Shown: one piece after another, positions 6,072 through 34,933 of the stretch
How positions within the stretch are numbered: position 1 is the stretch's first letter
Layout: each line of letters starts with the position of its first letter
NCBI RefSeq assembly: GCF_000315625.1
Contig: NW_005434609.1
Span: 62,001 to 126,000 of the forward strand
Reading direction: 5' to 3'
DNA: 64,000 nt
DNA from: Guillardia theta CCMP2712
Taxonomy: Eukaryota > Protista > Cryptophyta
Made by a program: the position numbers and the translations under genes
The notes under the pieces: model-generated
What the model saw: only the letters and a program-made list of their open reading frames with translations
The model's database searches: none
Told to the model about the DNA's origin: nothing

Positions 6072-9000
6072 ATGAGCTCGCTTCACCTGGCCCACCTCAT
6101 GCTCATGCTGTTTGTAGCCCAGATAGACTTTGGGCAGAGCTGGCTGATGATGACGAGTGGAGGATCCTGCCGTGTGTTGTCAGGTTTCTGCTTGGCTTCC
6201 AAACCTCCTCTGCTCCATATGAATCATGTAAGGCGTTCATGGACCTCTTCAGGCAGAGCTTCGCTTCAAGTGGTGAGAAACCCGCGCCTACGAGGAGGAA
6301 CGGTCGAGGTTTCCTCGAAAGGCAGCAAGCTCCTTGCAAGCGCATCCGACTCTTCGGAGCCAGAGGAGATCGTACGGATTCATGAAAGCAACGAGCTTGA
6401 GGACTATCCCACAAGTGAGAACATTGCTTCAGAGCCGCTTCCCTTCTACTCCCCCGAGAGCGACGAGTGGCCGATGGACTACTTCGGAGAGAGCACGCGA
6501 GGAGACCTCCTTCCCTCGGAAAACTTCTTGAAACCGGAGATGATCATGTCTAAGGACGAAATCATCAACATATGTCAAGATCTTGGATTGGACAGGGTGA
6601 GCTCCTACATCAAGCATCCTCTCTCTTCTTGTTCCTCCGCCCTTGCAACCAACATTGACCATGATCTCATCCTCTTTGCGTCTGCCCCCCCATTCCGCAT
6701 GCCCTGACGTTACCTGCTGCGTTGGCTCACTCTTCCTTGCAGTGGGGTACACCTAAAACCTGGGGTCTCCCAGCTCAGCCCCAACGATCCATTTTTTGCA
6801 GCCGAACGCTCAATCTTCGCAGCATCCGATGCATCGGCTACGACATGGACTACACGCTGATCCACTACAAGGTGACCGAGTGGGAAGGGCGAGCTTACCA
6901 CTACGCCAAGGAGAACCTGAAGCAGGTTGGCTTCCCGGTCGATGACCTTCACTTCAACCCGGAGCTCGTCTGCCGAGGTCTCATAATCGACAAGTCCCTC
7001 GGCAACATGGTCAAGGTTGACCGGTTCGGGTACGTGAGGCGAGCAATGCACGGGACCCGCCGACTGTCTCACCGGGAGACGCATGAGATCTATGGGAGGC
7101 AGCTGGTGGACCTGCGGGAAAAGCGATGGCTGTTCCTCAACACGCTCTTCTCTGTATCGGAAGGATGCTTGTATGCACAGCTGGTGGAGATGCTGGACTC
7201 GGGGGGACTGAAGATCCCGACGGAGTCAGGCGACTACATGCAGCTCTCCTACGAGCAGCTCTTCAACGCTGTGTCCAAGGCCCTGTTCAAGGCGCACGTG
7301 GAAGGGAGGCTCAAGGCTGACGTTATGAGAGACCCTGAGAAGTACGTGGAGTTTGACAGGGAAGTGGCTCTCACTCTCCTGGATCAGAGGGAGGCAGGCA
7401 AGAAGCTAGCGCTCATCACGAACTCGGACTGGGAGTACACCAAGGTGATGATGGCGCAAGTGATAGATCGGTTTCTTCCCAAGGGCATGACGTGGAGGGA
7501 GATTTTTCACGTCATCATCGTGTCTGCGCGCAAGCCCGCGTTCTTCTCTCAGAGCATGCCCCTATACGAGATCGTGACGGAGGATGGGATGATGAGGGAG
7601 AAGTTCAGGATGAAAGAGGGGAGGATCTACTCGGGGGGAAGCGCGAGCATGGTTGAGAAGCTGTTCAACTGTGAGAGGGACGACATCATGTACATCGGCG
7701 ATCACATCTTCACGGACGTCAACGTTGCGAAGCTCTATATGCGATGGAGGACGGCTCTTATCGTCCGTGAGGTGGAGGAGGAGGTGGTCGCGATGGATCG
7801 CGGAAGGCAACACACCCAGGAGCTGCACAGTCTGATCAAGAGCAAGGAGCAATGCGCCAACATCCTCAACCACATCCGTACTGAGCTCCACCGATACCGC
7901 GGGCTAGGACTCAAGTCCTCCCTGTTCAATGCCTCCTCGGAGAAGGTCAGCCTCCCCCTTAGCCTTCCCCCTCCCTTCCCATCCGTCTCTTTGACGTCTC
8001 CAATCTGACAAGTCTGCTGGGCAGGAGCTGTACGAGACCATGGGGAGGCTGCTGGGGACGATGGTGGAGTATGACAACAAGATTGCGCCCATGTTGTATC
8101 AGGAAGGGTCTCACTTCAACCCCTACTGGGGCTACATCAGCCGAGCTGGTTATGCCGACAAGTCGCACCTGATGCGGCAGATCGAGAAGTACGCTGACGT
8201 CTACACGTCTCGCGTCTCAAACTTCCTCCGGTAGAACCTTCTTCACTACTAAGTCCTCCCATCCCCTCCCTCCCTTCCATCCTCCCTCTCCTGCCTCTTC
8301 TCTTCTACTTCCCGTCCCTTCCACTTGCCTGCCCCTCGTTGTTTATCTGACTTCTGACCTTCACTGCAGCTACACGCCCTACATGTACTTCCGGGCTTCG
8401 AAGCAATCCCTTGCTCATCATCGCAACTTGGATCAGTACCGGCAAGAGGTGAAAACTTTTCCCGCTCTCACGTTATGCTTCCTCCTTCCATACTGTCTTC
8501 ACTTCTCCTCCTTCAACAGTCCTCACTGTCTCCTCCTGCTGGCAGTGCACTCCCTCGGGTTTCTCACTCCCTCCCCACTTCCATTCTCTCCACACTCTCC
8601 CATTCCTCATCCTCCCCTTCTTTTCACGAGAGCTGCCACAGGTCCCCGCAAGCGTGCTTGAGCGCATCGACATCTACCCAGAGGAGAGGAGGGAGCGAGC
8701 GCGACTTGCCGAGGGAGTTCTTGACGAAGTTCCATCGGCTGACTCTAGAGCATCGGACTCGCGCGAGGGCTACGTGGACCCAATCTGCCGGGAGATGCCC
8801 CCAGCATACCCCGGGCAGACCTCGGGGTCAGCAGTGGTGGTGGTGGAGGGGTCGGACGGGAGCACGGGGATGTGGGAGATGTCCAACACAGAGTTCGGGC
8901 ATCAGATCGAGAGATCGGGGATCCCGTCGCTAGACAACGTGGCAGGAGGAGCAGTGAGGGAGCAAGAGCCGGAGGTAGAGAACTCCTACTGGAAGCGGAG

Positions 9001-9076
9001 GCAGGGGAGCAACTCTAACGACGAGTTCGACGACTGGGATCTTAACAAGTCGGTGGATCCGATTCAACCAAGATGA
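6072..9076 (+). CDS. HAD-superfamily IG 5'-nucleotidase (cN-II-like) with N-terminal bipartite presequence, multi-exon
   Basis: Motif I GYDMDYTL, LITNSDWEYT, YIGDHIFTDV, FNPYWG, QIEKYADVYTSRVSN; hydrophobic N-terminus MSSLHLAHLMLMLFVAQ followed by an S/R-rich stretch and RLRGG. Confidence 0.9.
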
Positions 9077-9405
9077 GTTGCAGCCCAGGTTGTGCATGTG
9101 TATTAAAGTCATGAGACGAGACCCTTGGGCCCGCCCCCGACCCCTTTCACTTGTTAGAAAGGTGCTTCACTTTCATGCAAGGAAAAACTTGAAACCTTAA
9201 GGCGGTGTTTGTAGTGTCAGCCATCCCTTCCCACTCTCCTCTCGTTCTCTCCAGTGTTCCTTCTGTCCTCCTCTGTCCTCCCTCCTCCTGCGCTCACTCC
9301 CTCACTTCTTGCTTAACAAACTTCCTCGTGCTTTTCTTCTGTCTTGCTCCTCTCCTGTATTCAAGTCTGTTGCGAGTTCCACCGCCCCATCGGATGCAGA
9401 CTTTT

Positions 9406-11306
9406 TCATTGATCCGATGGAGAATCAGCGGGCAATTCATCGCTCGACTGTGAACCTGCAAGAGGAGTCGTGAGACTGCGTGCTGAATGAATGTCCCTCT
9501 CACCTTGAAGCCGAATGTCCAGAATCTCAAAGTCGTACGAGACAATCTTCTGCTTCATGTAGGAGTAGCTGGCTCAAAAGTAAGCATGTGCGAGAGGAGG
9601 GAGGAGGGAGGAGGGAGGAGGAAAGAGAAGGAAGATGGTGCAAATGTGCAAAAATGGGGAAGATAGGGAGACAGGACGAAGGAGAGCAAACACACAGACA
9701 CATCAAGATGAAAGAAGCAAACTGAGGGGTCGAATCAGACAAGGCAGGACAGAGAGGAAGGAGGCGTGCCATCCATGAAACTCTCCACCTGTTGTCCAGG
9801 GTCATGTAGACTGTTCCGTCCTCGACACACTGGAGACTTCCCCTCTGCCAGTCAACAGTTGAGCTCACGATACGATGAACTCCCACCTTCACAAACCTGT
9901 AGCGCCGCTACCCTCTCGCTCCCCGACTCAAAGAGGATCTCTGACTTGGAGCTTGCAGCAGCAACGAACTTCACTTGCAGCCCGACGTCCAACGCATCGG
10001 GACAAGCACACCTTCACTAGACGTCATGCTCTCAGGAGCGAAGTAATCACTTGGTCTACCATAACAGAGTCTGCCCAGCCCTGACTGTAGCCTGCACAAC
10101 TTTCTTGTCTCTGGCTGGGACGGTGACCTGCTCAAGGATCAGAGCGGGCTGGATAGAGGGTTCTACTTCAGCGCCTCACCTTTGCCCACTTCTCCATCTC
10201 ATCTTCTCCTCCTTCTAATCCTTCAGGCAACGCCCCTCCGAACAGGCAAGCGTGGTACTGCCTCAACGGTCAACGGGTGCCCTCCCCAAGCAGCCATCAC
10301 CAACCTGATCTTTATCGGCATGGTTGACGAGGATTGCTTCATACTCTTCCCTCGATCCGAGAACTGCAAGCTTGTGCTGGGATCGTGCTGGAACCACTGC
10401 AACCACCCGGTCAGTCTCCTGGCCCCCAAGAGCTCGCAGCCATACCTTGACGCAAGACTCCTCTCACGACTGTGGCGAACGGGCAGTTGAGGATGAGAAC
10501 TTTGTCTGCCATCTCCACGTAGTTTGCTGACACCTCACGGACCACCTTCATCCGTGTCACAACCTTATCCCCCAACCGAAGACAACCTTGCGCAGCATCC
10601 CAATGGGCCCTGTGGCAAGGTGATGCATCCCCAGCCCCTAGAAACGAGTCACTCTCCTGCTGCTCGCACGCTCAAGGCACCTTGAGATCATGGATCTCCA
10701 GCGCACGGAACATGATGCCGGTCTCCGCCGTCAGCTGCGACAGCGTAATGAGCTTGTGCTCCATCTCGTATATGATGTAGAGCCGAATCTCTTCCAGGGT
10801 CACGGCCTGCAACGCAAGTCTGTGAGCCACCACAGGCAACTTCGATCTAACTGAACCTTGACAAGCTTTGCAGGATCAATCAGGCCCGTCAGCGTGATCA
10901 TGATGGGGCTGCCGTTCTTGTCTTTCCCTGTCTTCAGCAGCGGGTAAAATCGACGAACAGTCTCGTAGCGGGGGAACTGCTCTGGTTTCAACCCTCCCAT
11001 TATCTTCTTTCGGATATCGTTGATGTTGTTCTTGGTACGCCAGTCAAGCATCTCTATCACAGCATCTGCTGCGGTTTGAGGGTTCTTCTTGAACCCTATG
11101 AAGAACCGAAGCAACAGAGCGTCCTCCCAGTCCTCTGGCACGCTCTCGCGATCCATGGTCACTCCCTTGTTGGCGATGATCTCACGTATCTTGTCGATAG
11201 ACTGCTGGCCTGTCATCCCGTTCTCCCATGTTCTGGTCAGCAGGTTTTCCAGCTTGAAGTCAACAGCATGATTCTGGTGCGGAACCAAAGGGTTGGGATT
11301 CGCCAT
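9406..11306 (-). CDS. Sec14/CRAL-TRIO lipid-binding protein with C-terminal GOLD-like domain, multi-exon
   Basis: EDALLLRFF...MLDWR, GKDKNGSPI, EIHDLK, ILNCPF, VTVPARDK and YMTLDN exons joined by GT-AG introns; stop near 9406. Confidence 0.8.
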
Positions 11307-12494
11307 GTTGGATTTGTTCAGTACCTTTTAGCACATAATATCACAACCCTGAAATTTCAGGTCTCTCAAAAGGTCTTACCTACTGCTCGTGTCTGCAACC
11401 AGCGGCTAAACTGTTGTCAGGATTGAAGTTCCTGCGCCACCAGCACCTGCTCTGATTGACGGGGAGGTGTGAGGTGCGGTACGTGTGTTGGGATGATCTA
11501 AAGGCTTCCACCGAGTGTTAGCACATATACTCAAGTGAGAGCAAACAAGATCAGAGAACGAGATGCTCGAAGAACGAAGGTGAGTGGGACAAAGTCAATG
11601 CCGGAATCGAGGTACGCCAGTTGTTGCAGTAATGCAGCAAGGCCAATTCCAGTCGCTGCTGGCTGGTTCGATCCAAGGAACCAGGAGGAGAGGACGTCGA
11701 TGAGATAGGAAGGCGGGGAGGAGAAGGAAGCAACAGGAGGAGGAGGAGGAGAAGGGGGAGGAGGAGGAGGAGGAGGAGGAGGAGGTGGAGGAGGAGGAAC
11801 GGGGGCGGAGGGGGGCGGTGGGGGTTTGGAGGATGGAGGAAGCCAGCGGTGCACGGGAGAACTTCATCAATATGGGGTAGGGGTAGTGAAAACTAGGGGT
11901 AATGATTTTTGAATGGAGGTAGGGGTGATTCAGACAGTGGGTAGGGTACTGAAATTTTACCCAGAGATGGGGTTAAAGATCTTTTGAAAAATCAAGGTAG
12001 GGGTACAAGACTGAGACAGTAGGGTGTATTCATAACGGGTAGAATGTACAACATGTATGGTGGGTACATCAAACAAGGGGGTAGGGTATTCTTTGATATA
12101 TGTAGCGATTGAGCGATTCGGTGGGGTAGTCGAATGACTTAGTAGGGGGGTGATAGGGTATAGCACTCAGTCTAAGTACGGGTGGCAAAAACTAAGTACG
12201 GGTAGTTAGCACAAATTCACAGGACATTTGAGAGGCAGGTAAGCATGATGTTGAAAATTTCATTGAGCCTGAAAGGAAATTATTGGATGTAGGGTTGCTC
12301 CATTCGACTCCACAAAGTCAGGGTCCTTTCAAGGGGGTATGAAGTGTGAATCACCTCTAGGGTAGTGCATCCATACAAAGGGGGTGGTAAAGCGGAAGAA
12401 GAGGGTGGGCTGCATTTGAGTAAACATGAATCCAAGTAAACAAGGAAGACAGAACCTTTCCACCCTATAGCTCTCATTGCTGCCCTTCCTGTCC

Positions 12495-13560
12495 ACTCGG
12501 ACTGCCGCGCGACTCGCCGGTCACACGGTCGGATCATCGGATCAGTCGGACGGTGGCGGCAGTGGCCCGATCGGACGGAGCCTCCGTGAGTCGGACCCGG
12601 TCACCCGCCAGTCGGACCGCGGCCCCGGCCCCGGCCCGGCCGGGCCAGGCCCGTTCGGGTGTCCGATCATGGCGGAATACTAGACTCCCGCACACCGGAC
12701 CCCGGGGCTTAGGTGGCCGCCGCGACCGTACCTTCCGAGTTCTTTACTGGCAGTACTCAAAGTTAAGTTAAGCCGACCGTCCGATCCTGGCACGGTGCCG
12801 CCACGGTGATCACCCGGCTTGCAACGGCGTCTCAGGTGATCCGACCGTACTTGCAACTTGTGACGCATCCGCCGCCGGGGTGAGGGCCAGGATCCGAGCC
12901 GAGGCCCCGCTGAGGCTTTCGCCGAGTCAGCTCAATGGCATCCCTGTCCGGGCCGAGGCTGAATCCGGGCCATCATCATGCCATGATGGCCGCGATGATG
13001 GGCACGGTTCCAGAGTGCCATCCGATCGGATCATGATCCGATGATCGCGGCCCGGGTCACCCGGTGCCTTCCGGTACTACTAGGCTACCGTACGGTCACG
13101 ATGCACGGTGCGCACGGTCTCACTGACAGTGATTCCTTCGGCGCCGCGGCCACAGTGATCATGATGTACGGTACGGTCGGGCCCGGCTGGCATGGCAGTG
13201 GCGCGGGGGAATTGTCAGTCCTGCGCTTTTCTCTCCTCGCCGTTTGGCCATTGCGACAGGCACGGTCCCCGGGTCACCGTCAGGGTCAAGCCTCCGACTC
13301 CTCGACTGTCCATGTAACTTAACTTTGAGTCACAGTAATGAAGAGTTGTGATCGGACTCAGACCCGTTCAACCGTTGAACGGTTCTCACGCGGCCCCGGC
13401 GCCGCCGGGTCGGCCCGAACACTGGCCCGCCGTCGGAGCTCGGAGTCCCGGCCGACTGATGGCATGGCTCATGCGCTCGCCCGGCACTGGGCAGCCCCCG
13501 CCGCGCCGTCGGCGGTCACTTCCGGGAAAAGGGCTCATGTAGGCCTCTTTCCGGAAAAGG
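12495..13560. other. GC-rich palindrome-dense intergenic island
   Basis: Dense CCGG/GGCC/GATC/TGAC micro-palindromes; perfect 18-bp palindrome ATCGGATCATGATCCGAT at 13025-13042; no credible ORF. Similar islands at 18210-18660, 54725-54938, 57940-58325, 60785-60960, 62850-62925, 63140-63250. Confidence 0.75.
13221..13330 (+). mobile_element. Degenerate 3'-terminal copy interrupted by GC-rich insertions
   Basis: TTTTCTCTCCTCGCCGTTTGGCC..GCGACAG[insert]GTCAGGGTCAAGCCTC..TAACTTAACTTTGAGT. Confidence 0.75.
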
Positions 13561-14946
13561 TTACTCAACTTTTTTATAGTACATTTTAATACGTTTTATA
13601 ACATCTTTGTACCATTACAATGTTTTACATTGCTAAAAGAATTATACATCCTCGTCGTCAGTAAAGCACGTAGAAGTTGGCCCGTGACTCTCGTGTCACG
13701 GTTGTCAGCAAGCTCTTACGTTCCGACACAAGATATCCCATATTTTCAAATCTTTCACTTAATATTGAAATATTTCAAAGAATATTTCAGAAATTTCTCG
13801 GTATCGTGATCTGGTCCAGGAAGATTGCTGATCTCCAGGTAGGGTTGTAAAATCAAGGGTACATCCATAGGAAGCGACCACTCATTTAGAGGGTGGGGTA
13901 GTACCCACAAGGGGTTGAAGAAACGTGGAGTCAGGCCCGGTCAGCAAGATCTTCAGCAAATCCACTACCCCTCCCTGAGTACCCCACCCACCATGTGTTG
14001 CCCTCTTCAGGAAAAAAAAATTTAGTACCCCACCCCGTGAACACGTTCTCATTCAACCCGGTACTCATAGCAGTTTAACCTCCAGCAGTGACCACTACCC
14101 ACCCCTCTACGTTCCTCGAACCCTGGAATGACCGACCCCCACAACCCTCATCCCTCGGATGACTTTACGAGTACCCCTTCATTTACCACCATATACCCCC
14201 CTCTGATCAGTACCCTACCCCACTTCCTGATGTGTCGAATTGATCACTCGGTGTTTTCCGACTTTTGCCCCTGTGACCCGATTCACCACCCCACCTTGAT
14301 CCCAATATCTGTACCACCCCTCATGGCAATTCGACCCCACACGAAAACCACCCACCCCTTCAATTACACGTCTTTCGATCGAAACTGGTATGGTGTACCC
14401 ACCCAGCCTCCCTTTACTACCCCGTGAATAGCTAAATGTACCCCACCACATGGACCTGGTCTTCTACCCCTCAATACGAATCCTACCACCCACCCCTTTC
14501 TCCAACCACCATAGGGTCCTCACACAAACTCCCTGCTCATCGCTTTCCCCTGTTTCTCGCTACCCTCGCATCGTCGCTCATCGACTCTCGCCTCCCTCAC
14601 CTCCCTCCCTCCTCTCTCCTCCTCCTCTTCTTGCTCAACCACGTTATCCTCGGTCGTTTCACGTCCGTTTGGCCTTCTCCTCTGCCATCTCGTTGCTTTT
14701 TTTGCCCTGATCGCAGTTCGGTCTTGTAACGACCGCTGTGGCCCTGGTGCCCTCTCGTCTCCTGCCGCATTCTTTCCCTGTTCAATTCAGAAGTAGCCCT
14801 TTTTTCAGTTTACACAGACATCCTTGTGAACAAGGTTTGAGCTCATTCCACCACTCTTGAGAACTTGTGTTCGAATGTTCAAACGTTGACAGTCAACTGG
14901 ATCAAATTGTGCGTATTTCTCGTCCCTCTGTTCGATCCCAGTCAAA

Positions 14947-16548: not shown

Positions 16549-16784
16549 ATCCAGAAATATGGACAGCTTGTTAATTCTAGACAGCTTGGCAACGAGCCTC
16601 AAAAATCTCAACTGTACTTTTGTAAATGTTTTTTCAGTATGCTACCTGAAAAACTAGAGTATTGTTTTTAGAATGTGCTTGAATAATGAATGGTTTGATG
16701 GAAATGCACGGTGGACTTTCTTTGTCATTCACTGATTCGGCAAAGAGTGAAATTTGTTTTAGTCCTCTTTAATCCATGCACATT

Positions 16785-17634: not shown

Positions 17635-17676
17635 GCTTAGCGCTCGAGGAAGGATTCAGGACGACGGGAGGTGTGT

Positions 17677-17766
17677 GTGTATGAAGGAGATAGATGTGCT
17701 TCAGGATGTGTATGAAGGAGGTAGATGTGCTTCAGGATGTGTATGAAGGAGATAGATGTGCTTCAG
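17677..17766. repeat. 31-bp minisatellite, about 3 copies
   Basis: GTGTATGAAGGAG(A/G)TAGATGTGCTTCAGGAT repeated. Confidence 0.9.
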
Positions 17767-22086: not shown

Positions 22087-23158
22087 CCCTGACCTTCCTC
22101 TCCCTCTCTTGTCCTCCTCTTCTCCTGCCTGCTCCCCCCTCCTCCGCCATGTCATGCCATGCCCCAATCCTTCGCTTCCCTGTTTCGCTCTATCGACATG
22201 AATTCAGACCCTTCGGAAGGGACGCTTTACGGCAATGTGCATAACCGAACCTCACAGCTAGCAAAAGGACAGAGATTGTAGTTTACCCGTTTTCACCCTT
22301 CAAAATTGCTGCCCTCCACCGCATGGATCCGACCATGTGCGCCATGTCGCCCTGCTCCTACTTTCCCCGCCAGCCCCCGCCAGCCCCCGCCCTCCTCTCT
22401 CCTCCTCTCTCCTCCTCCTCTCCTCCTCGTTCTCTTCTCTCTCCCTCTCCTCCCTCCCTCTTGTCCCTCTCCCCTCTCCCGCCCTCTTGTTCCCTGCCCC
22501 CCTTTTCTATTCGTTCCCATTTTTCGAGGTTACCCCGATTTTTCCTTCACAGACCCTCTCCGCTTCTTTCCCTGTCTCCTGCTGCCTGTTCTCTTCACTG
22601 AATACCATCATGAACATTGATTCTCCCTTCAGCAACAAAATGTCCTCGATGAGTCTCCCTCCTTCTCCCGCATGCTCTTGATCGTGTGGAGCCTGTATCT
22701 CAGGCTTAATGACGACCTGGTCATGTAATGCCGGACGGATGGCGCGGCTCTGCTGTCTCTAATGGTTTGTGTGCCAACGTCAGGCGCTCTCCACTCCCCT
22801 TGAACTCTTGTGGCTAGGATTCGTGCCCTCCCAGAATGTTGTAACTCAAGATCCCTTTTCTGTATCTTTGTCTTCCTGCATGATGAAACATGGATTGAGC
22901 GTCGATTCTGAACCTCACACACCCCTTAAACGATAGTATCTGTCTTTCTCAATCCGATAGCATCAAGGATTTTTGAATATCACGCATGACTGAGCTCTTG
23001 GTTTTGTACTCCAGGTGCCTGGTGGTAATGTCCTTGCATTAGATGCAGGGCATCATACACGACATGCATGAGGTCGTAGAGCAGGGAGCGCGATCCTGAT
23101 CCTAGTGGTCTTATGGGATCCGAACAAGGCCTCCTTTGGCTCGCCCTTACTTAGAACG

Positions 23159-26100
23159 ATGAAGTTCAGCCTGTCCGCCGTGCTGATTTTGCTACAATTC
23201 TCGGCTCTCCGTTGCAACACGCATCAGGTCAAACCTGCACTCTGTCAGCAGCCTCGCACCTCGACCGGTGACCTGGTGCGGTCGCCTCTGAGGTTGAGAG
23301 GAGGGAGTCAGAATGGCGATGTGGGAGTCGGGGAGATCAAATTTCAGAACATCTTGCTGGCCTTGGAAGTGCTCCACAACCCTTCAGAGACAAAGGAGCG
23401 GAGGGACGAGGCCCTTTCCCTCTGCCAAGGGGTGAAGGAGCGGAACTCGGAGTGCAGACTTTATGCTGAGAAGCTGATGCTCTTCACTTTGCCCGATCCC
23501 GTCCGGCACTTTGGTCTACAGCTCTACGAGCACTTGGTCACAGTGCGCTGGAAACAACTGCCTGCCACGATGCGAGAAGAACTGAAAGTCAACGTAATGA
23601 CCCTCCTGTACAATGGGACAAAGAGCATCCAGGAAGAATCGAACTACATCAAGGGCAAGATCGTGCAGGTTGTGGTGAAGATCGCGCTGCAAGAGTGGCC
23701 GCGCAGTTGGCCGAATCTGCTGTCTGACCTCCACTTGCTCGCTGGTGTCGGGGAGACGCAATGCGAGCTGGCGGTTATGGTGTGGCGAGCGCTACCTGAG
23801 GAGTTCATGCTGTCTCCGCTGTCGATCGTGGAACGCAATCAAATGATTCAAACATGGCGGGGGGACTTGGAGAGAGTTGTCTCGTCCCTTCGGCAACTCT
23901 TGATTTCAACCTTCACGAGAAGGAGCCTGGTAAGAGAGGAGCGGTGAAGGTGGACTGGGCGCTGAACCTGATCTGCAAAGGACGCTCAGACAATCAGGAT
24001 GGTGCAGGAGATCGTCCGTTGCATTGAGGTTCAAGTCGGTTTCACGACCTTGCAGATGCTGGCTGAAAAGGAATTCGACTCGCTCCTCCTCCCTCTGCTC
24101 GACAACCGCTTCCTACGTGACAGGTAACATAGGCCATGACTGCGACGTGACGATGAGAGTAAGTGACGTCAATTCTGTAGTGTGTTGGACGTTGTATCCG
24201 CTCTGATCAACAAGAACAACCGAGGAATCTACTATGACAGTCCGGAGCAAGTCTTCTTGTGGAGCATCATGTGACCCTTTGCTTGTCCCCGTCGCTCGGG
24301 CTCATCAGCGGCTGACGCAGGAGGGGGATGATGCGGTCTTGCCACTTTGCGATGCAGGCCAGCAGCGAAGCCGAACCGAAAATGGACGACTATGAGTTTC
24401 TGAAGCACATAGCGCAGGTTTCGACCTCTCCCCTCTCCCCTCCACCTCTTGACATGAAGGTCCTCCTGCCAGATTTTCTGCGAATTTGGTGTGAACTTCT
24501 GGCCGGTGAATATCGTCTTGACCTCATACGGAGGGAGAGTCTGACATATGGTGGCGGCAGCTGCTGGAGCGGAAGGAGGCAGAGTTCGAGCAGTTCACCA
24601 GCGTCATTCTCACCCTCTCGCACGTGAAGAGCCTCAACGTCCTGTCCTTGACACTGTCGTACTGGGGAGCATTCATCGAGAGGAAGAGGAGCGGGGAGAA
24701 CGCGACGAGCTTGTCCAACAAGGATGAAATGCTGCTGTTCTCCTTCGGCAAGGTAGATGTGCCCGTGAAGTTGAAGATGCTGATGATGGTGTAGATCCTT
24801 GAGATCACCGTCGACAACGCGTTTGGGAGTAATGGAATGAGCAAGCTGGACGAGCAGGACTTTGTCGAGGAGGATGAGTTTGTGCAGGTACGAGAAGAAA
24901 ACCTTTCCTCCCCTCCCCTCTCCTCTCCTCTCCAGAACCTCTTTCTCCTTTCCACAGATCTCCTCTCCTCACCTCTGATCTCAGCTCCCTTCCTCGCTTC
25001 CTTCTAGTCACTTCTTACAGGCATGGTTCAACCTTCGATCACGCATCCTCGACTTCGTGCGCAAGATGTCGATCCTCTATCCGAGCCAGCTCTTCCTCTT
25101 CACCTCGGAGAACTGGAAGCGGACACTGAGCTTGAGATCAAGCATGCAACAACCAGGTGACAACCTTCATGACGGAGAGCGTCTGACGGATGCTCGTCAG
25201 TGGCCTCCCTAGACGGCAAGGCAGATGCATGGTACCGCCTGCTGGAGAAGGTAGTCGAGTCGCTCCCTCAAGATGCGTTGGCGGCAGGTGGAGCAGAAGA
25301 GAGGGAGGAGAGACTGGTGCGGCTGAGACGAGGAGCAGACAGCAGTTGCTACAAAATGTGCGCGGAGCTGGTGGAAAGTTTGACCGACGTCATCCCACAC
25401 GCCATAGAGGCCGTTGTGAGTAGAAGATGGTCAGGTTTGCTACAGCAGGCAAGTGACTTCCTCGCAGACTTGCTCCATCCTCCGGGTCCTCGGCATCTTC
25501 CAACAGGTTTGACTTGCAACAACTGCCGTTTCCCTGACCCCGATGCCCTCGTAGCTGTATATCAATGCTCCGGAATCCGTTATCGTCCACGTCACCAAGA
25601 AGGCCAGTGGAGGAGGAAAGGAAAACTGTGAGAAGTCATTACAAGCGCAGGTCTTGCAGCTGCTGGCGCTACCGGGCTACGTCGACAATCATTTTGTATG
25701 TCATTTAGGTTGCTCATTCACTCGTTGATGTTGTCACGTGCAGATAAAATCCATCACGCTCACAAGTCCAGAAGTCAACTCAGATCAGAACATACAACGA
25801 ACTGCCCTAGCAGTGCTTGTTAAGATTGGTACTTTTGGTTTCTTGCTCTGGGAGTGCAATAACAACATTCTCGTTTTTCTTCTCCTCAAGGCACTCATTG
25901 TGCATCTAAGGTAACGAGTCTGTTCATGACGCTGTTTCCTGAAACTTGATTTCCCCAGCTCACTCCACACCTGCAAAGTCTGATTGAAGCAGTTCAAGGC
26001 CTGGCAGAACAAATAGAGTCAGAAGGACAGGTGACATCGATGCCTTTCAAACTTTTCTGCCTGTCTGTGATGAATCATCAACAGGGACATCTGATTGAGT

Positions 26101-28717
26101 TCTTGCTTCTCGTCACTACTCAACTTGACTCGCCGTATGAAAAGTCAACCATCATGGGTCTGTTTCACATTTCATCACATTACACCACATCATATCACAT
26201 GACACCACATTTCATCACATCACATCACATCGTTCAGTGTTTCGTGATCACTCTTTCTTCTCCACCTCCATTCCTCTCCTTTCCACTTATCTCTTCTTCT
26301 TCGTCTCTGCCTCACATCTGAGCACTTTCGCAGGACACCTTCTGGGCCCTCTCGTCCAAGAGTGGGAAACCCTCACTAGTTTACAGGTATACTGTTGGTT
26401 ATTCCAGCAGCTTCGCACCCTCAATGACTTTCCCCGCAGGATTATTCCCAAAACTTCCTCTCGTTGTGCTTCGAGGCTGAGGCAACTACACTGACCGAAC
26501 TCGTTGGACGTGTCTCATTACCCCCTGCAGGTATCAGAACAGTGCGCAAGACCCAAATATATCGAGGAGGAGAAGAGAAGATTGAGGGTATTGCACGCCT
26601 GTCCTGTCCTGTCCTGCCCTGCCCTGCCCTGCTCTGCCCTGCCCTGCCCTGCCCTGCCCTGCCCTGCCCTGTCCTTTCATCTCATCTCGCTGCAGATTCA
26701 TGCGATACTGCACACCTTCAACCTCATCCTCAGACGATTGGTAGAGAGCGAAGGGCACTTCGCCTATCGAGCAGAGGAGGCAGCCAAGTCTGCAAACATC
26801 GAAGAGAAGGAGACTCTCCTGATGACAAGGCTCATGTCCCCTTACATCTGGCGCTTGCTCCCGAACCTCATGCTCGCCATACAAGGTCCCTCATAGTTGC
26901 TGACTGCCTGTCTTTGCCGCTCTTTTCCCTTTTCGCTCACTCCTCTCCTTCCCTCCCTCCCTCCCTCCCTCCCTCCCTCCCTCCCTCCCTCCCTCCCTCC
27001 CTCCCTCCTCTCGTTCTCAATTAATCTCCAGGCCTCCACAATTTGTGGGCACCGGAGCTGAGGAGCAAGGTGCTGAGCATGTGGAAGGGAATCTACTTCC
27101 CCCTCGAGCTCCTCGTGTCTGTCGATCCCAACTACAAGAATCGAGAGAGCCATTGCGGCACGACCGTCGTAAGCTACGTGAGAGTCTCCTAGCAGCTTCT
27201 CCTGCTCAATGACGTCATCACCTGCAGCTGTGTGGGTGGATCAGGATGCAGAGGGACTTGCTGTACGAGATTCTGATGAATATCCTCTACCTCGGCGCTG
27301 TGACTGGAATCCACGAGCACCTTGCTGGCGACGTCAGCATCTTGCAGCAAGTGAGTGTTCTTGCCTTGCTGCAAAACGTCAGCAGCCGTTGACTTTTGAT
27401 CCGATCTCAAGGCATTTCACAACTCAATCAACATAGAGAACCGACACATAAGGTCTCTGGTGAGATCCGTCCTGTTGCCCATCCTCAAGAGCTGCAATTC
27501 GAGGTACCTCGAAAGGATCTTGGTAAATCTCTTGTATCGGAGGGTTTCAACTGAAGTTTGTGAACTCACATCAGAGTCCCATCCTCCCTCCTCTACTCAA
27601 CCATTTCCTGCATCGTCTCAGCACGGCAAGTCCCGTGGTTTGACGTCAAGGGCATGAGTTGACGGCTGTTCGCAGGGTTACGAGGCAATCGTCTACGAGA
27701 AACCAGCAGAACAGTTCATGGATGATGACGTTGTGATGCGGGTCTTCGGAGAAGAGATGATTTACGTCGTTCGAGAAAACTCGCTACGGCATCTACACCG
27801 AGACATCTGCGACTTGGCGTTGACGATCTGCAACATGGCCATGCAAAGTGCGATGCTCGAGACAGGAGGAGGAGTGGAAAGCTCCAGCTCCAGCGTCCCA
27901 GCAGCAGAAGTTGTCTTGCGGATGCATGGCGCCATGGCGGTACTGCTGAACATCCTGTCGAATAGTCTGGTATGCCAACGTGGTCAGTCAGGATGTGCCG
28001 CAAAACTGATCACGAGGGAGTAGGTGTGGGAAGACAGTATGGCAGGTCTGAAAGCCATCGAAGCTCTTCAGAGGATGATGCCGAAGCTCAGCGACAATGC
28101 CAAGTGCTTCTGATCGATCCCACAGCCTCTGAGACTGCTAACGGCCTTGTCGCTTCAGGTACCGCGACTTCTACGTGAAACAGTGTCTTCAACAGGCGCT
28201 GCACTGCCTGAAGAAGTACACGTGCCGTAGAGCGCAGGAGAAAGGAGGCATCACGTTGATAGAGGGGAAAGATGACGGAAACACGTTGGGCCCGCTGCTC
28301 GCACTGATCACCGACATTTATGTCAGTTCTTCGGGGAATCCAGCAGTACATGAGGTGATCCAAACAAGCGCGTGAACATCACTGAACCCACAACCTTGCG
28401 CAGCCCTTCATGGTTGAGCTTGGGATGAATAGCGCGGATGTGATACTGTTCGATGTGTGCCGTTTCCCTATGACAGTCCTCGACAGGTTCAGGAGCTTCA
28501 CTTTCTGGTCTGTGAACAAGTGAGAAGTTTTTTTCTGTCATTTTGATTTGTGACTCACGAATGTTCAGGCGAGGAACGAGAAGCAGAAACGACTGCAGAT
28601 GCGCGGTGAGCCAGCCTCCTGTCGGTGATGCTTCTCGCCCCTGACTTCACCTCCGACGCAGCCAAACTCCTCAAGTACATCGAGCAGAATCTCCCGAAAT
28701 TCAGATCCACGAGATGA
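23159..28717 (+). CDS. Exportin-5-like karyopherin with N-terminal signal peptide and LRLRGG, multi-exon
   Basis: IBN_N/Xpo1-type motifs VRHFGLQLYEHLVTVRW, YIKGKIVQVVVKIALQEWPRSWPNLL, DDYEFLKHIAQ, SHVKSLNVLSLTLSYW; many short introns; stop at 28715-28717. Confidence 0.82.
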
Positions 28718-29689
28718 TTGTGTGTCGAGGCCGACTGTATCCTCCTCCCTTCCTCCTCACCCTCCCTTCTCTCGACTCACTCTCTCACTCCCTCATCTCC
28801 CCTCTCCTCTGCTCTTCCTCCCTCCCTCCCTCCCTCCCTCCCTCCCTCCTTCCCTCCCTTCCTCCCTCCTGCTTGTACTTGTCAATCCTTGTCAAATTCT
28901 CCTACCCCACCCACCCCTTCATTCATCACTCATATAAAACCCACCCCTCAAATGTCTTTGTGAGATAAAACTCCGAAAATACCCCTGCACTTACACCTGC
29001 ACATTCCCTACCCCACATGTTATTATTACCACCGGTACCATTATAGGTTGAAATCAAGGAAAATACGGGTTGGCTTGACAACCCCACCCCTATTTTTAAT
29101 GACCCCACCCCCACGGAAGTATAAAGTACCCACCATACCTTTCGGGATCCAGTGAATCCAACTGACCATGTAGGTCTACATAGGACGAGGATTTACTAAT
29201 TGAAGCCCTAATACAAAATGAGAAAGTATCCTACTCCTGGGGTCAAGATTTGGACTTGTGAGCTAGAAGGTGGGGGGGGGAACGGGGGGGTGAGGAACAG
29301 AATTGGACGAAAAATGGGAGCGCAAGGATCCGTGTGCTGTGGGCCACCGGAGTTGAAGGAGGAGAGGAGGAGAGGAGGAGAGGAGAGGCAAGAGGCAGGA
29401 TGGACTGATGTGCTCGAGACGAAGAGGCAAGTGGGAAGAGGAACTACTGTGAGGACTGGAGCCAGCATTCCTGTCTCGCTGGCTCCTTCGAGGAGGAGGT
29501 CAAATCTGAGGTCAGACAAGAACTTCTTCTTGATTTTCGTTTCCTTGCTTCCCTTCCTTCCTATCATCCCTTTCTCCTCCTTGTCTTTCTTCTCCTTGCT
29601 TTTCTGCTTCCCCTTGCTCCGATTCTTCTGCATGTCTACATTTGCGGCCTCTTTGCTGACATATTGCTAGATATCCGCGTTTGACTGCG

Positions 29690-30052
29690 ATGGAGGCTAC
29701 CAATGACTCGCGATTTCATGCCATTGAGGCCAGCAACAATCCTCCGTCAAGGAAAATGTCGACAGGGAGCGATACGAGTCAAATGTCAATCCAGTCTTCC
29801 AGGTCTTCGTCGTCGCTCCTCTTGACCCAGAGGAAGGCAGTCAATGACATGACTCCGGCTGAGCACGCGTTCACCATCTTGCATCAAGTCCAAGTGCAAC
29901 ATGGCATCGAGTCGTTCGCCAAGGTCCATGAGGTGACGATGCTGCTGTCGGTAGAGGTGTGAAGGTAGCTGATCGAAGCTTTCTTGCAGTCTCCGAGTGC
30001 GATTGTTGAAAACAAAGAGTATGCAAAAGTTCGATTCGAGGACAACAGATAG
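29690..30052 (+). CDS. Small hypothetical protein (~100 aa, 2 exons)
   Basis: MEATNDSR...KVHE joined by a GT-AG intron to SPSAIVENKEYAKVRFEDNR*. Confidence 0.45.
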
Positions 30053-30269
30053 GACTTGGAGGAGTGCTGCTGTTTATACTGAGCATCTCATCTCAGACTG
30101 CGGTCTGTTTGTATCTCTTGCCTGCTCCTCTTCCTCGCTGCCTCTTTCAAACATGTCAACCAGCTCTGATTCACTTAAAACTTGTTCATTATCTGCTGCT
30201 AGAGTTCCACACAAAATATACAGATGAAACAAAAACTGAAGGAACGGAAAGAATACAACATGGCTAATA

Positions 30270-33200
30270 TTACATCCGCTGTAAGCTGATCGTAGTCTTC
30301 TCGGCTACTGTCACTTCCTGCCTGTTCAGAGGGGAGAGCAGTGCAAGCTTTCGCCTCCTGTGCGTCAACCAGAACCGGACCTGCTGGAGGGTCAGCTGGG
30401 GAGGACAGGCGAGCAGCGACTCACGAAGCTCTTGATGCGAGCAAGGAGAGCAGAGTCCTGCTTGAACTTCTGCCTGTGTGCCTTCGTGTCGTCGTCTCCC
30501 TGTGTCACCTTGCGGCCAAGTCAGCTGCTGGGCAAGGCGAGGGCAAGAAAACCATGTGGGGCAGCAGCCAGCTCCGCATGATTGATCCCGGCACAAGATG
30601 TCTTGACAGGTACTCCCTCGCAGACCTTCACGCCATCAGTGGCTCCTCGCCTCCTCCCTCCTCCCTCCTCCCTTCTCTGCCTCGTCCTTTCTCGTCCTCC
30701 CTGCTCTCGCTCATGCTCACCTCGCTCCGCTCGCGTAAAGTTTGGCCTGCATGGCATGGTCGAGGCGGAAGGTTGAGATGGGAATCTCAGGGGCCTGGAC
30801 CCACAGCACTCTAGAGTCAGTCTTGTACTGTTCCTGTAGGAAACGATCAGAACATGGGAGGGAGGAAAGAGTGAATTGCCTTCTGCTGCCTCTGCAACGT
30901 GTAGAGGATAAGATCTCCCACCCTCACGCAGTAACTTTGTAGGGTACGAGGAGCAGCCTGATGATAACGAAGAGGGAAAAAGTCAGGAAGGGGGGAGAAG
31001 AAGGAAAGGGGCGCAAGAGCGCAGAAGCAGGAGGAGGAGGAGGAGGAGGAGGAGCAGCAGCAGCAGCAGCAGGCACAATTAGCATGAGAGCAAAAGTTCC
31101 TTTACCTGCTGCGGATCTCGACCAGTCGCTATCCAGAACGCGAGGGTCTTCTGGTTCTCAAGGGTTGCTGACCTGCTCCTCGTGCTGTTGTCGTCCTCGT
31201 CGAAGCACCAGACAGGGCAGTTGTCGATCACCGCTCCATCCACCAGCCTGTCTCCCTCCTTCGTCCAGACCTGCCGACATCACGTCATCGCCTCCTTCCT
31301 CCGTTTGGCTGCCTCACAGCGTCGAAGAGGAAGGGAACGCTCATGGAGCACCTCGCTGCCATGGCCACCTGAAGGGAGTCAGAGGGATGAAGTAGACGGA
31401 GGAGAGGAGATGGGAGGAGGAGATGGGAGGAGGAGATGGGAGGAGGAGATGGGAGGAGGAGATGGGAGGAGGAGATGGGAGGAGGAGATGGGAGGAGGAG
31501 ATGGGAGGAGGATATGGGAGGAGGAGATGGGAGGAGATGGGAGGAGGAGGAGGAGGAAGCCACTGCACCTGATCGTTGGGAGTCCTGCTCGCAGAAAACT
31601 CGATCAGGTCGCCACTTCGCAGGGAAGTCGCAAAAATCTTGAGGAGTATTCCCTGCGAACGAATGGCGAGGCATGAGCCCAACAACGACAACTCGACAGA
31701 TAGCGATCAGATGAAGAGGAGGAGGAGGAGGAGGAGGAAGGAGTTTGAGGAGAGGATGAACGAGAGCAGCCCGTTATCGTTGACGATGAGAAAGGCTACG
31801 ATAACAGGGGTAGGGGGAACGGTTTCCACAGCTCACAGTGTGGTCATAGAGCTGCTTGAAAGTAGCCCCGGACAAGCCCGTGTAGCGATGGATGATCTCA
31901 TCTACCTAGAGAACTAGCCGTCAGCTTACATCCCTCGGACCTCCTTACCATGGCCTACTTTCTGCGCGAGAATCTCTCCATTGACAGCGCCGAAGTCGTT
32001 GAGCAAGCTGCAGGAGGTCGAGTCAGAGACTTCGGCAGGGCCTTCGCTGCTGACCGCGAAAGCGTCGAGGGCGTCTGAAGGATCGCAGTCGCTCGTTCAG
32101 TCTCGTCTGCGATATCTTCCCAGCACATCTGAATCAGCCAAGAGGCAATAAGTTCAAACTTCCATCCTACCGGTAAAATCGAAGGACAGTGCCGTCTCCT
32201 TCACGTCCTGCACGGAACAGCCGCAGGCGATCGCTACGGCCACCACACTGCCTCCTGACACTCCAGCAACTCTCTTGACCCATCGCAAGTCACTCCCCTT
32301 CTGACGAACCACCATGTCAGTCATGCCCTTGCTCCTGCTCCTGCTTGTCCTACAAAATCACCCTCCTCCTCCTCCTCCTCCTCCTCCTCCTCCTCCTCCT
32401 CCTCCTCCTCCTCCTCCTCCTCCTCCTCCTCCTCCTCCTCCTCCTGATGCTCCTTCATAAACTCTCTACCTGATCTCCGAAGCAGTTGGCGATCACAGCA
32501 AGAGCAGGGGGGAAGGCCAAGACCTGCATACGAGTCAGGAGAGGAGAAGAAAGAGGGACGAGACGGGGGACCTTGACGCCTCCTCCGCTGAAGACGAGGT
32601 TCTCCCACTGAGGAGTTGACATGCGATGTTTGCGCGAACGCCAGAGGTGGAAGGAGGAAGAGGAGGATTCTTCCTGCTCGTTGACAGCGAAGACGTTGAC
32701 AGGAAGGAAGGAGGAAACAGGCTGGGGGATCCTTGAGACAATACAGGGAGCGCGGAAGGAGGGGACTGTTCTGCGGAGGAAGTCAAGGTAGGACCAGTCA
32801 ACCGGTCGCTGAGGCGGGTCTTCGTCCTCCTCCCTGTTGGCTCGGTCGGTGAAGGAGAGGAGAGACGGAAAAGAGCCAACGACTTTGACCAGCCGTCTGA
32901 CCATGTCCCAGTCCAGGCATGACGTCACCTGCTCCCTCCCGGCGGCCAGGTGCATCTGACTCTCCATGATGGTCACCCTCCGCTGCCTCTCCTTCTCCTC
33001 GTTCTGCCAGGTCTGGGAGGAGGTCAGCGCCTGCAGCCATTCGTCGCGCTCCTTCATGGTGTCGAAGAGCAGAAAGGACCTCCTGTCCTTCTCCATCACG
33101 ATCTCGATGCTCTTCCCAGCTCTCTTCTTGTCACAGGGAGCGATCCTGACAACCTCAAGGTCCCACTCCTCCACAGGCTTCTTCCCGCTCGTGAACTCTC

Positions 33201-34933
33201 GCTCGCTGCCGTACCCAATCAGGTTGTTGTCCACCAGCGCCAGGTACCTCGACTCCCATATCTTCATCTTCTTGATGCCCCAAGTCGCCTGCCGCATCGC
33301 GAACCCGTACTTGGTGAACGGGTTGTGCTTCAGAGAGAGCAGCCTCTCTACTCTCGGGACGCCCTGTACCAAGAACCGCTGCACGTCGACAAGCTCTGGA
33401 GTGCAGAAGTCATGGGCCATGAACGCGTACTCCTTGTACTCCACGTTCAGCCCGAAGCTCGTCAGCCTCATGCTGGCCTCCTTCCCCTCCTTGCAAGGAA
33501 CGATCGAATCCCCCAGCCCATGGCACACCAGCGTCGGCGTGCGACGGGAGGTCGGGGAGAGCGTCAGCCCTTGAATGCTGAACCCATCGCTGAGTCCTGC
33601 TAGGAACTTGGGGAACCAGGAGCTGAGGACGACCAGCCCTCCCACCTGCTGCCGGCAGGTCAAGGCCGCGAGCATGGCAACGATTCCCCCATGCCCGAAC
33701 CCAACCAGACAGATCCTCTTGGAAGGAACTCCTCCTTTGCCGCTGCCAGGCGGTCAGAGCGGAACGAGCGAGCGGACTGGGCGATGGAAGGGGAAGAGGA
33801 GGAGAGTAACTTACGAGGTCTGCTCGCGGATCAGGCGATGGACCAACGTCACGCTCCTCTGCAGACCCTCCACCTGGCATGCAGGTGAGACTCTGCTGGG
33901 TCCGTGCTGCTCCTTACCTCCCCCAGATGGTCGAACTTGAGGTCGCCTTCGAACCACCTGCCTTCCTGCGACTTTCCTCCCTTCCTCTGATCCTCCTGCG
34001 GCTGAGGAGCATGAGGGAAGATGAAGCGACACCTTGAGAGGTGAGCGCATGTCAACTTCATGTCAACGGCTTGTCAAGGCAAACTACCAAGGGACGTCCA
34101 GAGCACAGGGCAAGTCGCCGTCAACAAAATCTTGAGCTTCGTGACCCTGCACACGCGTCACGCTGATGAGAAAGGAGGACTCGGAGTCTTCTTCACCATC
34201 CCATGCAGCCAGATGATCGTTCCAGTATGCTCCTCCTGCGGATCCACCTGTTTGCTACCTCAACATGTTGAAGTGAACAATCGACCTTAGCCTCTCACCA
34301 CTGTCACTCTCAGCGTGTCATTCTCCCCCAGAGTGTCTGCCATGGGCACGTGGGAACGCGCAGGAGAGCCCTTGAACAGATCATCAGCACATCACCGCCT
34401 CTGCGGCACAAGACATGCTACTCACTTCCTGCACGTCCGACCTCGGAGACGACTGCGACCGGGAGTCTTGCTCGGGGCTTCGAAGTAGATCTCTGCCGTC
34501 GAGGGTTCAGCGATCCCTCGGAGGAAGAGGACTTGAAGGAGACTCACCGTGAGTCAGGAGGAGGAGACGGAGAAAAGCTCCTGCTGGTGTAGGGCTGGGC
34601 CGAGAAAGAGGCGTTGCTAACGTTTCCCAGGATGGCAGTGCTTGAGAGGTTGGGAGACAGGAAGGAAACATTCTCCTGGACCAGCTCGTTCGCACTCGTT
34701 AGATTCAAAGTTGTCTTCTGAGGACTGCGGAGTATCCAACTCCTCGCTCCTCCTCGCAATGCGAGCTTGCTGAACTGTGCCGAGACTCCGCCCTGATCCT
34801 GCCGCAGCCCCAGAGCACTCCAACTGCCCTCTCCAACTTCACCGAAGACGCTCCTGTCGCTTGTAGGGATGCAGCTGCCTTTCAGCTCAAGGAAGAGGAT
34901 CAGAGTCAAGGCATGATAGTGAGAAAGCCTCAT
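30270..34933 (-). CDS. Fusion protein: presequence + phospholipase/carboxylesterase (LYPLA-like) + PH domain + patatin-like phospholipase
   Basis: IIWLHG, FIFPHAP, ICLVGFGHGG, LVCHGLGDSIVP, MAHDF; PH domain (WESRYLALVD...ERDEWLQAL); patatin LVFSGGGVK, AGVSGGS, CSMSVPFLF, LVDGAVIDNCP. 3' end approximate. Confidence 0.78.
31405..31560. repeat. Intronic 13-bp tandem repeat (GGAGGAGGAGATG)n
   Basis: About 11 copies inside an intron of the patatin fusion gene. Confidence 0.9.
32362..32444. repeat. Intronic (TCC)n microsatellite
   Basis: Pure run; similar intronic SSRs at 1080-1180, 1370-1405, 2784-2840 (GAGTAT), 26601-26672 (CCCTG) and 26950-27007 (CCCT). Confidence 0.92.

What the first reader, a model, noticed from the sequence alone, without database searches (positions are those of the whole stretch)
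6072..34933. Signal peptide + ubiquitin-tail mimic (xLRGG) presequence on three unrelated proteins
Seen: the 5'-nucleotidase (RLRGG, aa 72-76, nt 6285-6299), the exportin-5-like protein (LRLRGG, aa 44-49, nt 23288-23305) and the esterase-PH-patatin fusion (LALRGG, aa 57-62, nt 34748-34765) all start with a hydrophobic leader, then a linker, then LRGG before the conserved domain. The codons differ, so the motif is not a DNA repeat. None of the leaderless genes here has it at the N-terminus. Established: LRLRGG is the ubiquitin C-terminus cleaved by deubiquitinases, and red-lineage complex plastids import proteins with bipartite presequences through ERAD-derived SELMA, which includes ubiquitination and deubiquitination enzymes. 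Inference: LRGG is a DUB-recognised maturation site (or conjugatable Ub-like tail) that removes the transit peptide of proteins entering the periplastid compartment. I cannot confirm from here whether the motif has already been reported.
Basis: partly seen in the sequence, partly recalled or inferred. Interest (0 to 1): 0.88.

Follow-up and report, generated by a model that had tools for sequence, protein, structure and literature searches.

The report
Ubiquitin-tail box ends periplastid leaders
In the cryptophyte alga Guillardia theta, three unrelated genes in this window (and roughly 200 genome-wide) start with a signal peptide and a short variable spacer that ends in the last residues of ubiquitin (LRGG) exactly where the working protein begins; this conserved mark, which I could not find described, probably shows a ubiquitin-type protease where to cut the import leader off proteins sent into the remnant cytoplasm of the alga's red-algal endosymbiont.

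Summary
The genome is Guillardia theta CCMP2712.

- **Genome-wide:** of the first 26 true LRLRGG sites, taken in contig order, 16 (18 by eye) lie 30-110 aa after a Met plus a hydrophobic leader. A scrambled control gave 1 of 30, and bare LRGG sites gave 0 of 22 (p about 3e-6). That extrapolates to about 190 genes.
- **Not a DNA repeat:** the codons differ and the leaders are otherwise unrelated.
- **At the junction:** the box sits exactly where leader meets mature protein. In the periplastid eEF1A paralogue, LRLRGG replaces the initiator Met in 12 of 12 relatives, against 0 of 37 ordinary EF1A.
- **Conserved:** LRGG is invariant in 9 of 9 cryptophyte orthologues of the window's exportin (Hanusia and Baffinella among them), while the rest of the leader cannot be aligned.
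- **Cargo:** cytosolic or nuclear types. Four Lhc precursors, which go on to the stroma, lack the box.
- **Expression:** spliced transcripts contain gene 2's leader.

Cleavage after GG, and a deubiquitinase as the enzyme, remain inference. I found no candidate enzyme and no publication describing the motif. The scan had already flagged this motif on other pieces of the same genome.

The parts
6072..6299 (+). Gene 1 leader: Met, hydrophobic signal-peptide-like core, S/R-rich spacer, ending in RLRGG (aa 1-76)
6285..6299 (+). Gene 1 box RLRGG (Pro at -6)
6300..8008 (+). Gene 1 mature part: a linker, the conserved PFYSP...DYFGESTRGD block, then the cytosolic-type 5'-nucleotidase domain. It spans two ORFs, 6072-6704 and 6722-8008; the splice between them was not mapped.
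   Evidence: PF05761, E 1e-118. The orthologues carry the same block contiguous with the domain.
23159..23305 (+). Gene 2 leader (aa 1-49), ending in LRLRGG
   Evidence: Spliced transcript contigs cover it.
23288..23305 (+). Gene 2 box LRLRGG, identical to the ubiquitin C-terminus
   Evidence: LRGG is invariant in 9 of 9 orthologues.
23306..23928 (+). Rest of gene 2 exon 1: exportin N-terminus (IBN_N and Xpo1). The first intron runs 23929-23979 with GT..AG ends.
34748..34933 (-). Gene 3 leader (aa 1-62), ending in LALRGG, which is the NEDD8-type tail
34748..34765 (-). Gene 3 box LALRGG
32455..34747 (-). Gene 3 mature exons: esterase motifs (IIWLHG, GFGHGG), then the ORF 33675-32455 with the Abhydrolase_2 C-terminal part and a PH domain. 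That ORF ends in a patatin-like GGG motif. The exon joins were not mapped.

Best explanation
The xLRGG box is the C-terminal boundary of the bipartite leader (signal peptide plus transit-peptide-like spacer) that cryptophytes place on nucleus-encoded proteins bound for the periplastid compartment and nucleomorph.

Proposed sequence of events:
1. The signal peptide takes the precursor into the ER and is removed there.
2. The S/R-rich spacer carries it across the periplastid membrane through the ERAD-derived SELMA machinery.
3. In the periplastid compartment a peptidase that recognises the ubiquitin tail cuts after Gly-Gly. This releases the cargo with its native N-terminus and discards the spacer, together with any ubiquitin attached to it during translocation.

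Proteins that travel on to the stroma must keep their transit peptide, so they lack the box.

**Shown here:** the motif's position, its enrichment, its conservation, the type of cargo, and transcription of gene 2's leader.
**Inferred:** the periplastid location, the cut itself, and the class of enzyme.
For: **Enrichment.** 16 of 26 true LRLRGG sites, sampled in contig order, have a leader. The scrambled control gave 1 of 30 and bare LRGG sites 0 of 22. Fisher p is 2.9e-6 and 4.4e-6.

**Junction position.**
- The leader of L016 ends in LRLRGG directly before GKEKHH..., the eEF1A N-terminus without its Met.
- All 12 relatives of that paralogue end their leader in LRGG at this point. All 37 ordinary EF1A with N-terminal extra sequence have Met there.
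- L028, L006 and L014 have LRLRGG directly before a Met.

**Conservation.** The 8 exportin relatives closest to gene 2, among them Hanusia phi and Baffinella frigidus, all carry xxLRGG before the conserved domain. L46, R47, G48 and G49 are the only invariant leader columns. The other 142 exportins have no such N-terminal box.

**Protein-level selection.** Codons and flanks are unrelated between genes.

**Cargo.** Cytosolic or nuclear types: cN-II nucleotidase, exportin, eEF1A, an N-terminus that looks Trm112-like by eye, methyltransferase.

**Spacer.** 16% Ser, 9% Arg, and few acidic residues.

**Stromal route.** The junctions of four Lhc precursors lack the box.

**Expression.** Spliced transcript contigs in three runs include gene 2's leader.

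**Literature.** An unidentified 'TPL peptidase' is postulated, and the absence of ptDUP from cryptophytes is called a conundrum (PMC5756292; preprint 10.1101/2025.03.31.646294).
Against: - No mature N-terminus has been measured.
- Known deubiquitinases usually need the ubiquitin fold, which these 15-50 aa spacers cannot supply.
- I found no deubiquitinase with a leader. Two UCH genes, one USP on another contig (C74) and the USP in this window all start without one. The other USP loci could not be read.
- Signal peptides were judged by a hydrophobicity rule, not by SignalP.
- The absence of Phe at +1 was judged by eye.
- The stromal control is only four partly seen Lhc junctions.
- In orthologues of gene 1 the box can drift (RLQGG, ISGG).
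Confidence: 0.6

Rival explanations
1. The box is a sorting or retention signal and is not cut. A periplastid factor that reads ubiquitin tails (an E1-like, DUB-like or Cdc48-cofactor receptor) binds it, either to hold the protein in the periplastid compartment or to drive ubiquitin-independent extraction through SELMA.
For: The box is identical to the ubiquitin and NEDD8 tails, and it is found only on periplastid-type leaders. No cleavage data exist.
Against: A retention signal has no need to sit exactly at the native N-terminus or to replace the initiator Met, as it does in eEF1A in 12 of 12 cases. Leaving 20-50 extra residues on eEF1A or an exportin seems costly.
Confidence: 0.18
2. The box is a cleavage site, but the enzyme is not of a deubiquitinase fold. 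It could be a dedicated metallo- or serine peptidase for the transit-peptide-like spacer that converged on LRGG.
For: No deubiquitinase with a leader was found, and cryptophytes lack ptDUP. Stromal and mitochondrial leaders are removed by M16 metallopeptidases (general knowledge).
Against: The match to the six-residue ubiquitin tail and to the NEDD8 variant LALRGG is hard to explain unless an enzyme is involved that already reads that tail. The periplastid compartment has its own ubiquitin system.
Confidence: 0.15
3. The pattern comes from common descent: one leader cassette was copied in front of many genes by duplication or exon shuffling, and the shared motif is inherited, not selected.
For: Many genes share the same six residues.
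Against: There are 17 distinct codon strings among 18 sites. The upstream DNA is 26% identical, the random level. Leader and mature N-terminus share one exon. The box is kept in orthologues whose leaders cannot be aligned.
Confidence: 0.02
4. The pattern is chance, a composition effect, or an artefact of mis-called start codons.
For: Bare LRGG-coding DNA is not enriched genome-wide: 12115 hits against 14038 for the backwards control.
Against: Fisher p is about 3e-6 for the link with leaders. There is cross-species conservation. Transcripts contain gene 2's leader. An annotated G. theta gene model includes such a leader.
Confidence: 0.01

Closest known systems
Bipartite targeting sequences of periplastid-compartment proteins in cryptophytes and diatoms (signal peptide plus transit-peptide-like region without Phe at +1; Gould et al. 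2006, as cited)
   Same: There is an N-terminal hydrophobic leader, then an S/R-rich spacer with few acidic residues. No aromatic residue follows the likely signal-peptide cut. The cargo is of cytosolic or nuclear type.
   Different: No conserved element at the C-terminal end of the transit-peptide-like region has been described in what I could search. Here a near-invariant [LIV]-x-L-R-G-G box marks that end.
Ubiquitin precursors and ubiquitin fusions (polyubiquitin, Ub-ribosomal protein fusions, the ubiquitin-fusion technique)
   Same: The sequence LRLRGG is followed directly by the N-terminus of the next protein, often Met. A cut after GG would give an exact native N-terminus. No Pro was seen at the residue after GG in the sites examined.
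   Different: There is no ubiquitin fold upstream, only a 15-50 aa unconserved spacer. The ubiquitin-like part would be thrown away and the downstream protein kept.
Coronavirus papain-like protease sites (LXGG) in viral polyproteins
   Same: A deubiquitinase-fold protease reads a short linear LxGG motif with no ubiquitin domain attached. This shows that such recognition is possible.
   Different: That system is viral, not part of organelle import. No homologue was sought or found here.
PEXEL/TEXEL export motifs of apicomplexans (RxLxE/Q/D, cut by plasmepsin V or ASP5)
   Same: A short conserved motif lies a few tens of residues after a signal peptide, and cleavage there licenses onward trafficking.
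   Different: The sequence, the protease class (aspartyl), the compartment (ER) and the destination (host cell) all differ.
ptDUP, the periplastid deubiquitinase of diatoms (Hempel et al. 2010, as cited)
   Same: It is the postulated step in which ubiquitin is removed from imported precursors in the periplastid compartment.
   Different: The ptDUP clade is reported absent from cryptophytes. It is thought to remove isopeptide-linked ubiquitin, not to cut the precursor chain.

Membership tests
Periplastid-type bipartite targeting sequence (cryptophyte) | N-terminal signal peptide | tested here: met
   A hydrophobic core (Kyte-Doolittle mean of 2.0 or more over 10 aa) lies within the first 35 aa of all three window genes and 16 of 26 sampled sites. 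This is a heuristic; SignalP was not available.
Periplastid-type bipartite targeting sequence (cryptophyte) | Transit-peptide-like spacer rich in Ser/Thr/Arg and poor in acidic residues | tested here: met
   Spacer composition is S 16%, R 9%, D 3%, E 5%. Lengths run 5-81 aa with a median near 20.
Periplastid-type bipartite targeting sequence (cryptophyte) | No Phe or other aromatic residue at +1 of the signal-peptide cleavage site | tested here: inconclusive
   By eye none of about 20 leaders has F, Y or W after the likely cut, but no cleavage-site predictor was run.
Periplastid-type bipartite targeting sequence (cryptophyte) | Localisation in the periplastid compartment or nucleomorph | not testable with these tools
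   Inferred from the cargo type (exportin, eEF1A, cN-II nucleotidase) and from the closest relatives of the nucleotidase being from plants and green algae.
Ubiquitin / ubiquitin-like modifier precursors | C-terminal tail LRLRGG (Ub) or LALRGG (NEDD8) | tested here: met
   Gene 2 has LRLRGG and gene 3 has LALRGG. There are 26 true LRLRGG sites in the sample.
Ubiquitin / ubiquitin-like modifier precursors | Beta-grasp ubiquitin fold (about 70 aa) preceding the tail | tested here: not met
   Only 15-50 unconserved, S/R-rich residues lie between the signal peptide and the box, and they do not align between orthologues. No Pfam domain was found in the first exons of genes 1 and 3, which include the leaders.
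Ubiquitin / ubiquitin-like modifier precursors | Cleavage after Gly-Gly by a deubiquitinase | not testable with these tools
   This needs N-terminal proteomics or an enzyme assay.
SELMA-associated deubiquitination (ptDUP type) | A USP-family enzyme with a bipartite leader, encoded in the same genome | tested here: inconclusive
   The genome gives 47 USP exon hits and 3 UCH loci. The four whose starts I could read have no leader. The literature reports no ptDUP clade in cryptophytes.

The most novel reading that the evidence does not exclude
Cryptophytes remove periplastid import leaders with a deubiquitinase-fold protease that reads a bare ubiquitin tail. One cut after LRLRGG would strip the transit-peptide-like spacer and any ubiquitin that SELMA attached to it. 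That would account both for the never-identified 'TPL peptidase' and for how cryptophytes manage without ptDUP although they have periplastid 26S proteasomes. One candidate is the zinc-finger protein with a Ufm1-peptidase (C78) domain that all four sequenced cryptophyte nucleomorphs encode and whose role is unknown (PMC6559170). This would be the first organelle presequence known to be processed by ubiquitin-system machinery.
Probability: 0.4. Interest if true: 0.92.

Novelty: new variant of a known kind. Interest (0 to 1): 0.85.

Why it matters
How the leader is removed from proteins that stay in the periplastid compartment is an open question. Reviews postulate a 'TPL peptidase' that nobody has identified. 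They also note that cryptophytes lack the diatom periplastid deubiquitinase, although they have periplastid proteasomes that could destroy ubiquitinated imports.

A near-invariant ubiquitin-tail box at the leader/mature junction of about 200 genes makes that question directly testable. It predicts the exact mature N-termini. It offers a bait (LRGG-based probes) for finding the enzyme. It gives a simple sequence rule for listing the periplastid and nucleomorph proteome of cryptophytes. If a deubiquitinase-type enzyme is confirmed, it would also show ERAD/ubiquitin machinery being re-used for presequence processing.

Tried and rejected
- **Bare LRGG counts:** 12115 hits against 14038 for the backwards control. 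None of the first 22 sites on contig 1 has a leader, so the four-residue motif alone is background and only the position after a leader matters.
- **Scrambled control (GGLRLR):** it was dominated by one repeat family, which looks like a retroelement with a reverse-transcriptase-like motif. It is usable but weak, so I added the bare-LRGG control.
- **Search for a deubiquitinase with a leader:** the USP in the window (38.8-40.5 kb, minus strand), a USP on contig 74 and two UCH genes all start without one. I did not try to obtain those letters another way.
- **Stromal controls:** only about 260 nt per Lhc gene could be fetched. These show the mature junctions but not the whole leaders.
- **L011 methyltransferase:** it has no homologues beyond its own G. 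theta entry, so it was no use for the conservation test.
- **RNA raw reads (X16):** only 5 reads were laid, so the transcript evidence rests on spliced contigs from runs labelled 'RNA?'.
- **Literature:** searches for LRGG with transit peptide, LRGG with Guillardia, RLRGG with plastid, and nucleomorph with deubiquitinase terms found no description of the motif. Stork et al. 2012 is not held.
- **Patatin in gene 3:** no Pfam hit.
- **Not attempted:** structure or complex prediction, because no candidate enzyme sequence was in hand.
Full report
**Observation.**
- Gene 1 (+): ATG 6072, RLRGG at aa 72-76.
- Gene 2 (+): LRLRGG at aa 44-49. Its ATG is at 23159, one base earlier than stated.
- Gene 3 (-): ATG 34933, LALRGG at aa 57-62.

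The six frames of the window hold only eight LRGG. No other leader-like ORF in the window has the box.

Pfam confirms a cytosolic-type 5'-nucleotidase in gene 1, IBN_N plus Xpo1 exportin domains in gene 2, and Abhydrolase_2 plus PH in gene 3. The esterase's N-terminal motifs lie between gene 3's leader exon and the large ORF, which ends in a patatin-like GGG motif. Patatin itself gave no Pfam hit.

**Organism.** The assembly has 87.1 Mb in 669 contigs. One sampled gene is 100% identical to GUITHDRAFT_99447 of Guillardia theta CCMP2712, and that annotated model includes the leader and box. G. theta is a cryptophyte. It keeps the remnant cytoplasm (the periplastid compartment) and the remnant nucleus (the nucleomorph) of a red-algal endosymbiont.

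**Genome-wide test.** A degenerate DNA pattern for LRLRGG has 353 matches in the genome. I took the first 30 in contig order, so the sample is unbiased.
- 26 of them encode true LRLRGG.
- 16 of those (18 by eye) lie 30-110 aa downstream of a Met followed by a hydrophobic core in the same open frame.
- A scrambled motif (GGLRLR) gave 1 of 30, and that one is the same locus read two codons earlier.
- The first 22 bare LRGG sites on contig 1 gave 0 of 22.
- Fisher p is 2.9e-6 and 4.4e-6.

Scaling 16/30 to 353 gives about 190 genes (95% interval 120-250). Variants such as LALRGG and PRLRGG are not counted.

The motif is not a DNA repeat. There are 17 different codon strings among 18 sites, and the 90 nt upstream are 26% identical, which is the random level.

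**Position.** The box sits exactly at the leader/mature boundary.
- In locus L016 it is followed at once by GKEKHH..., the eEF1A N-terminus without its Met.
- In L028, L006 and L014 it is followed by Met.
- The spacer between the hydrophobic core and the box is 5-81 aa (median near 20), with 16% Ser, 9% Arg and few acidic residues.
- No Pro follows GG in the sites seen.

**Conservation.**
- Gene 2's first exon was searched against 1.8 billion representative proteins. The eight closest of 150 hits all carry xxLRGG just before the conserved exportin domain, and none of the other 142 has an N-terminal box.
- Two of the eight are named: Hanusia phi (VTLRGG) and Baffinella frigidus (LQLRGG).
- In the alignment, L46, R47, G48 and G49 are the only invariant leader columns. 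Everything upstream cannot be aligned.
- For the eEF1A paralogue, 12 of 12 fragments with its signature (HCSIVVIG) end their leader in LRLRGG or LHLRGG directly before GKEK. All 37 ordinary EF1A with extra N-terminal sequence have Met there.
- Orthologues of gene 1 show RLQGG and, in Geminigera, ISGG at the same point. So the box can drift while GG is kept.

**Which route.** The cargo is of cytosolic or nuclear type, and the nucleotidase's closest relatives beyond cryptophytes are from plants and green algae. Both fit the periplastid compartment and nucleomorph. By eye none of the leaders has an aromatic residue after the likely signal-peptide cut. Four Lhc precursors, which continue to the thylakoids, show Ser/Thr-Met-Gln-type junctions and no LRGG. 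This control is small.

**Expression.** Contigs from three runs lack the GT..AG introns, so they derive from transcripts. They cover 22600 (or 23013) to 23928 without a break and then splice to 23980. Gene 2's leader and box are therefore in the mature mRNA. Raw-read coverage was negligible.

**Mechanism.** The simplest reading is that the box is the site where the leader is removed in the periplastid compartment, and that an enzyme which already recognises the ubiquitin tail does it. The literature fits this reading.
- Reviews postulate an unidentified 'TPL peptidase' (TPL = transit-peptide-like spacer) and call the absence of ptDUP from cryptophytes a conundrum, given their periplastid proteasomes.
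- A 2025 phylogeny again finds no ptDUP clade in cryptophytes and notes that G. theta imports a nuclear-encoded ubiquitin.
- All four sequenced nucleomorphs encode a zinc-finger protein with a Ufm1-peptidase-like domain, a putative deubiquitinase of unknown role.

I could test none of this. The deubiquitinase genes whose starts I could read have no leader, and the rest could not be fetched. Cleavage and enzyme class therefore stay inference. A non-cleaved sorting signal, or a protease that is not a deubiquitinase, remain possible.

**Novelty.** Full-text searches combining the motif with plastid, transit peptide or Guillardia found no description of it. Supplements and subscription papers were not covered. 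Earlier notes of this scan describe the same motif on other pieces of this genome. My counts and conservation tests were made independently and agree with them.

Noticed in passing
window 38782-40489 (-): A USP-family deubiquitinase gene (Cys box GLHNLGATCYLNS; PF00443 exon hits on the window's own contig) lies 4 kb from gene 3. Its upstream exons are Pro-rich, with no signal peptide or LRGG, so it looks like a host-cytosol enzyme and its nearness a coincidence.
   Followed up: partly
window 46107-46502 and 47601-47996; also 46970-47159 and 48153-48342: An inverted duplication: the arms are 396 nt (98% complementary) and 190 nt (96%). Each longer arm carries a near-identical 109-aa ORF (starts at 46140 + and 47963 -). 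A 100-N assembly gap lies next to it at 45972-46071.
   Followed up: partly
L032-L061 (for example L032:1997-2644:+): The scrambled control motif hit one dispersed, clustered repeat family (shared 17-mer GGAGGTCTCCGACTCCG, copies 1-3 kb apart in both orientations on many contigs). One ORF has a reverse-transcriptase-like AYADNVV motif, so it is probably a retroelement.
   Followed up: partly
P0300 / P0002 (Geminigera cryophila orthologue of gene 1): This orthologue's leader has Phe right after the likely signal-peptide cut (..GTAA|FQS..), and its box has decayed to ISGG. That would fit re-routing to the stroma with loss of the box. It is a single case, judged by eye.
   Followed up: no
window 23113-23154 (+): A 13-codon upstream ORF lies in the 5' leader of gene 2's mRNA, ending 5 nt before the main ATG at 23159.
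   Followed up: no
L017:1519-2049:+: A RETICULATA-related membrane protein (PF11891) also carries an LRLRGG leader. The box may therefore also serve membrane proteins that face the periplastid compartment.
   Followed up: no
window 25600-25649 (+): One of gene 2's transcript joints is listed with AG..GC ends, while all the others are GT..AG. It may be an alignment offset or a non-canonical intron.
   Followed up: no
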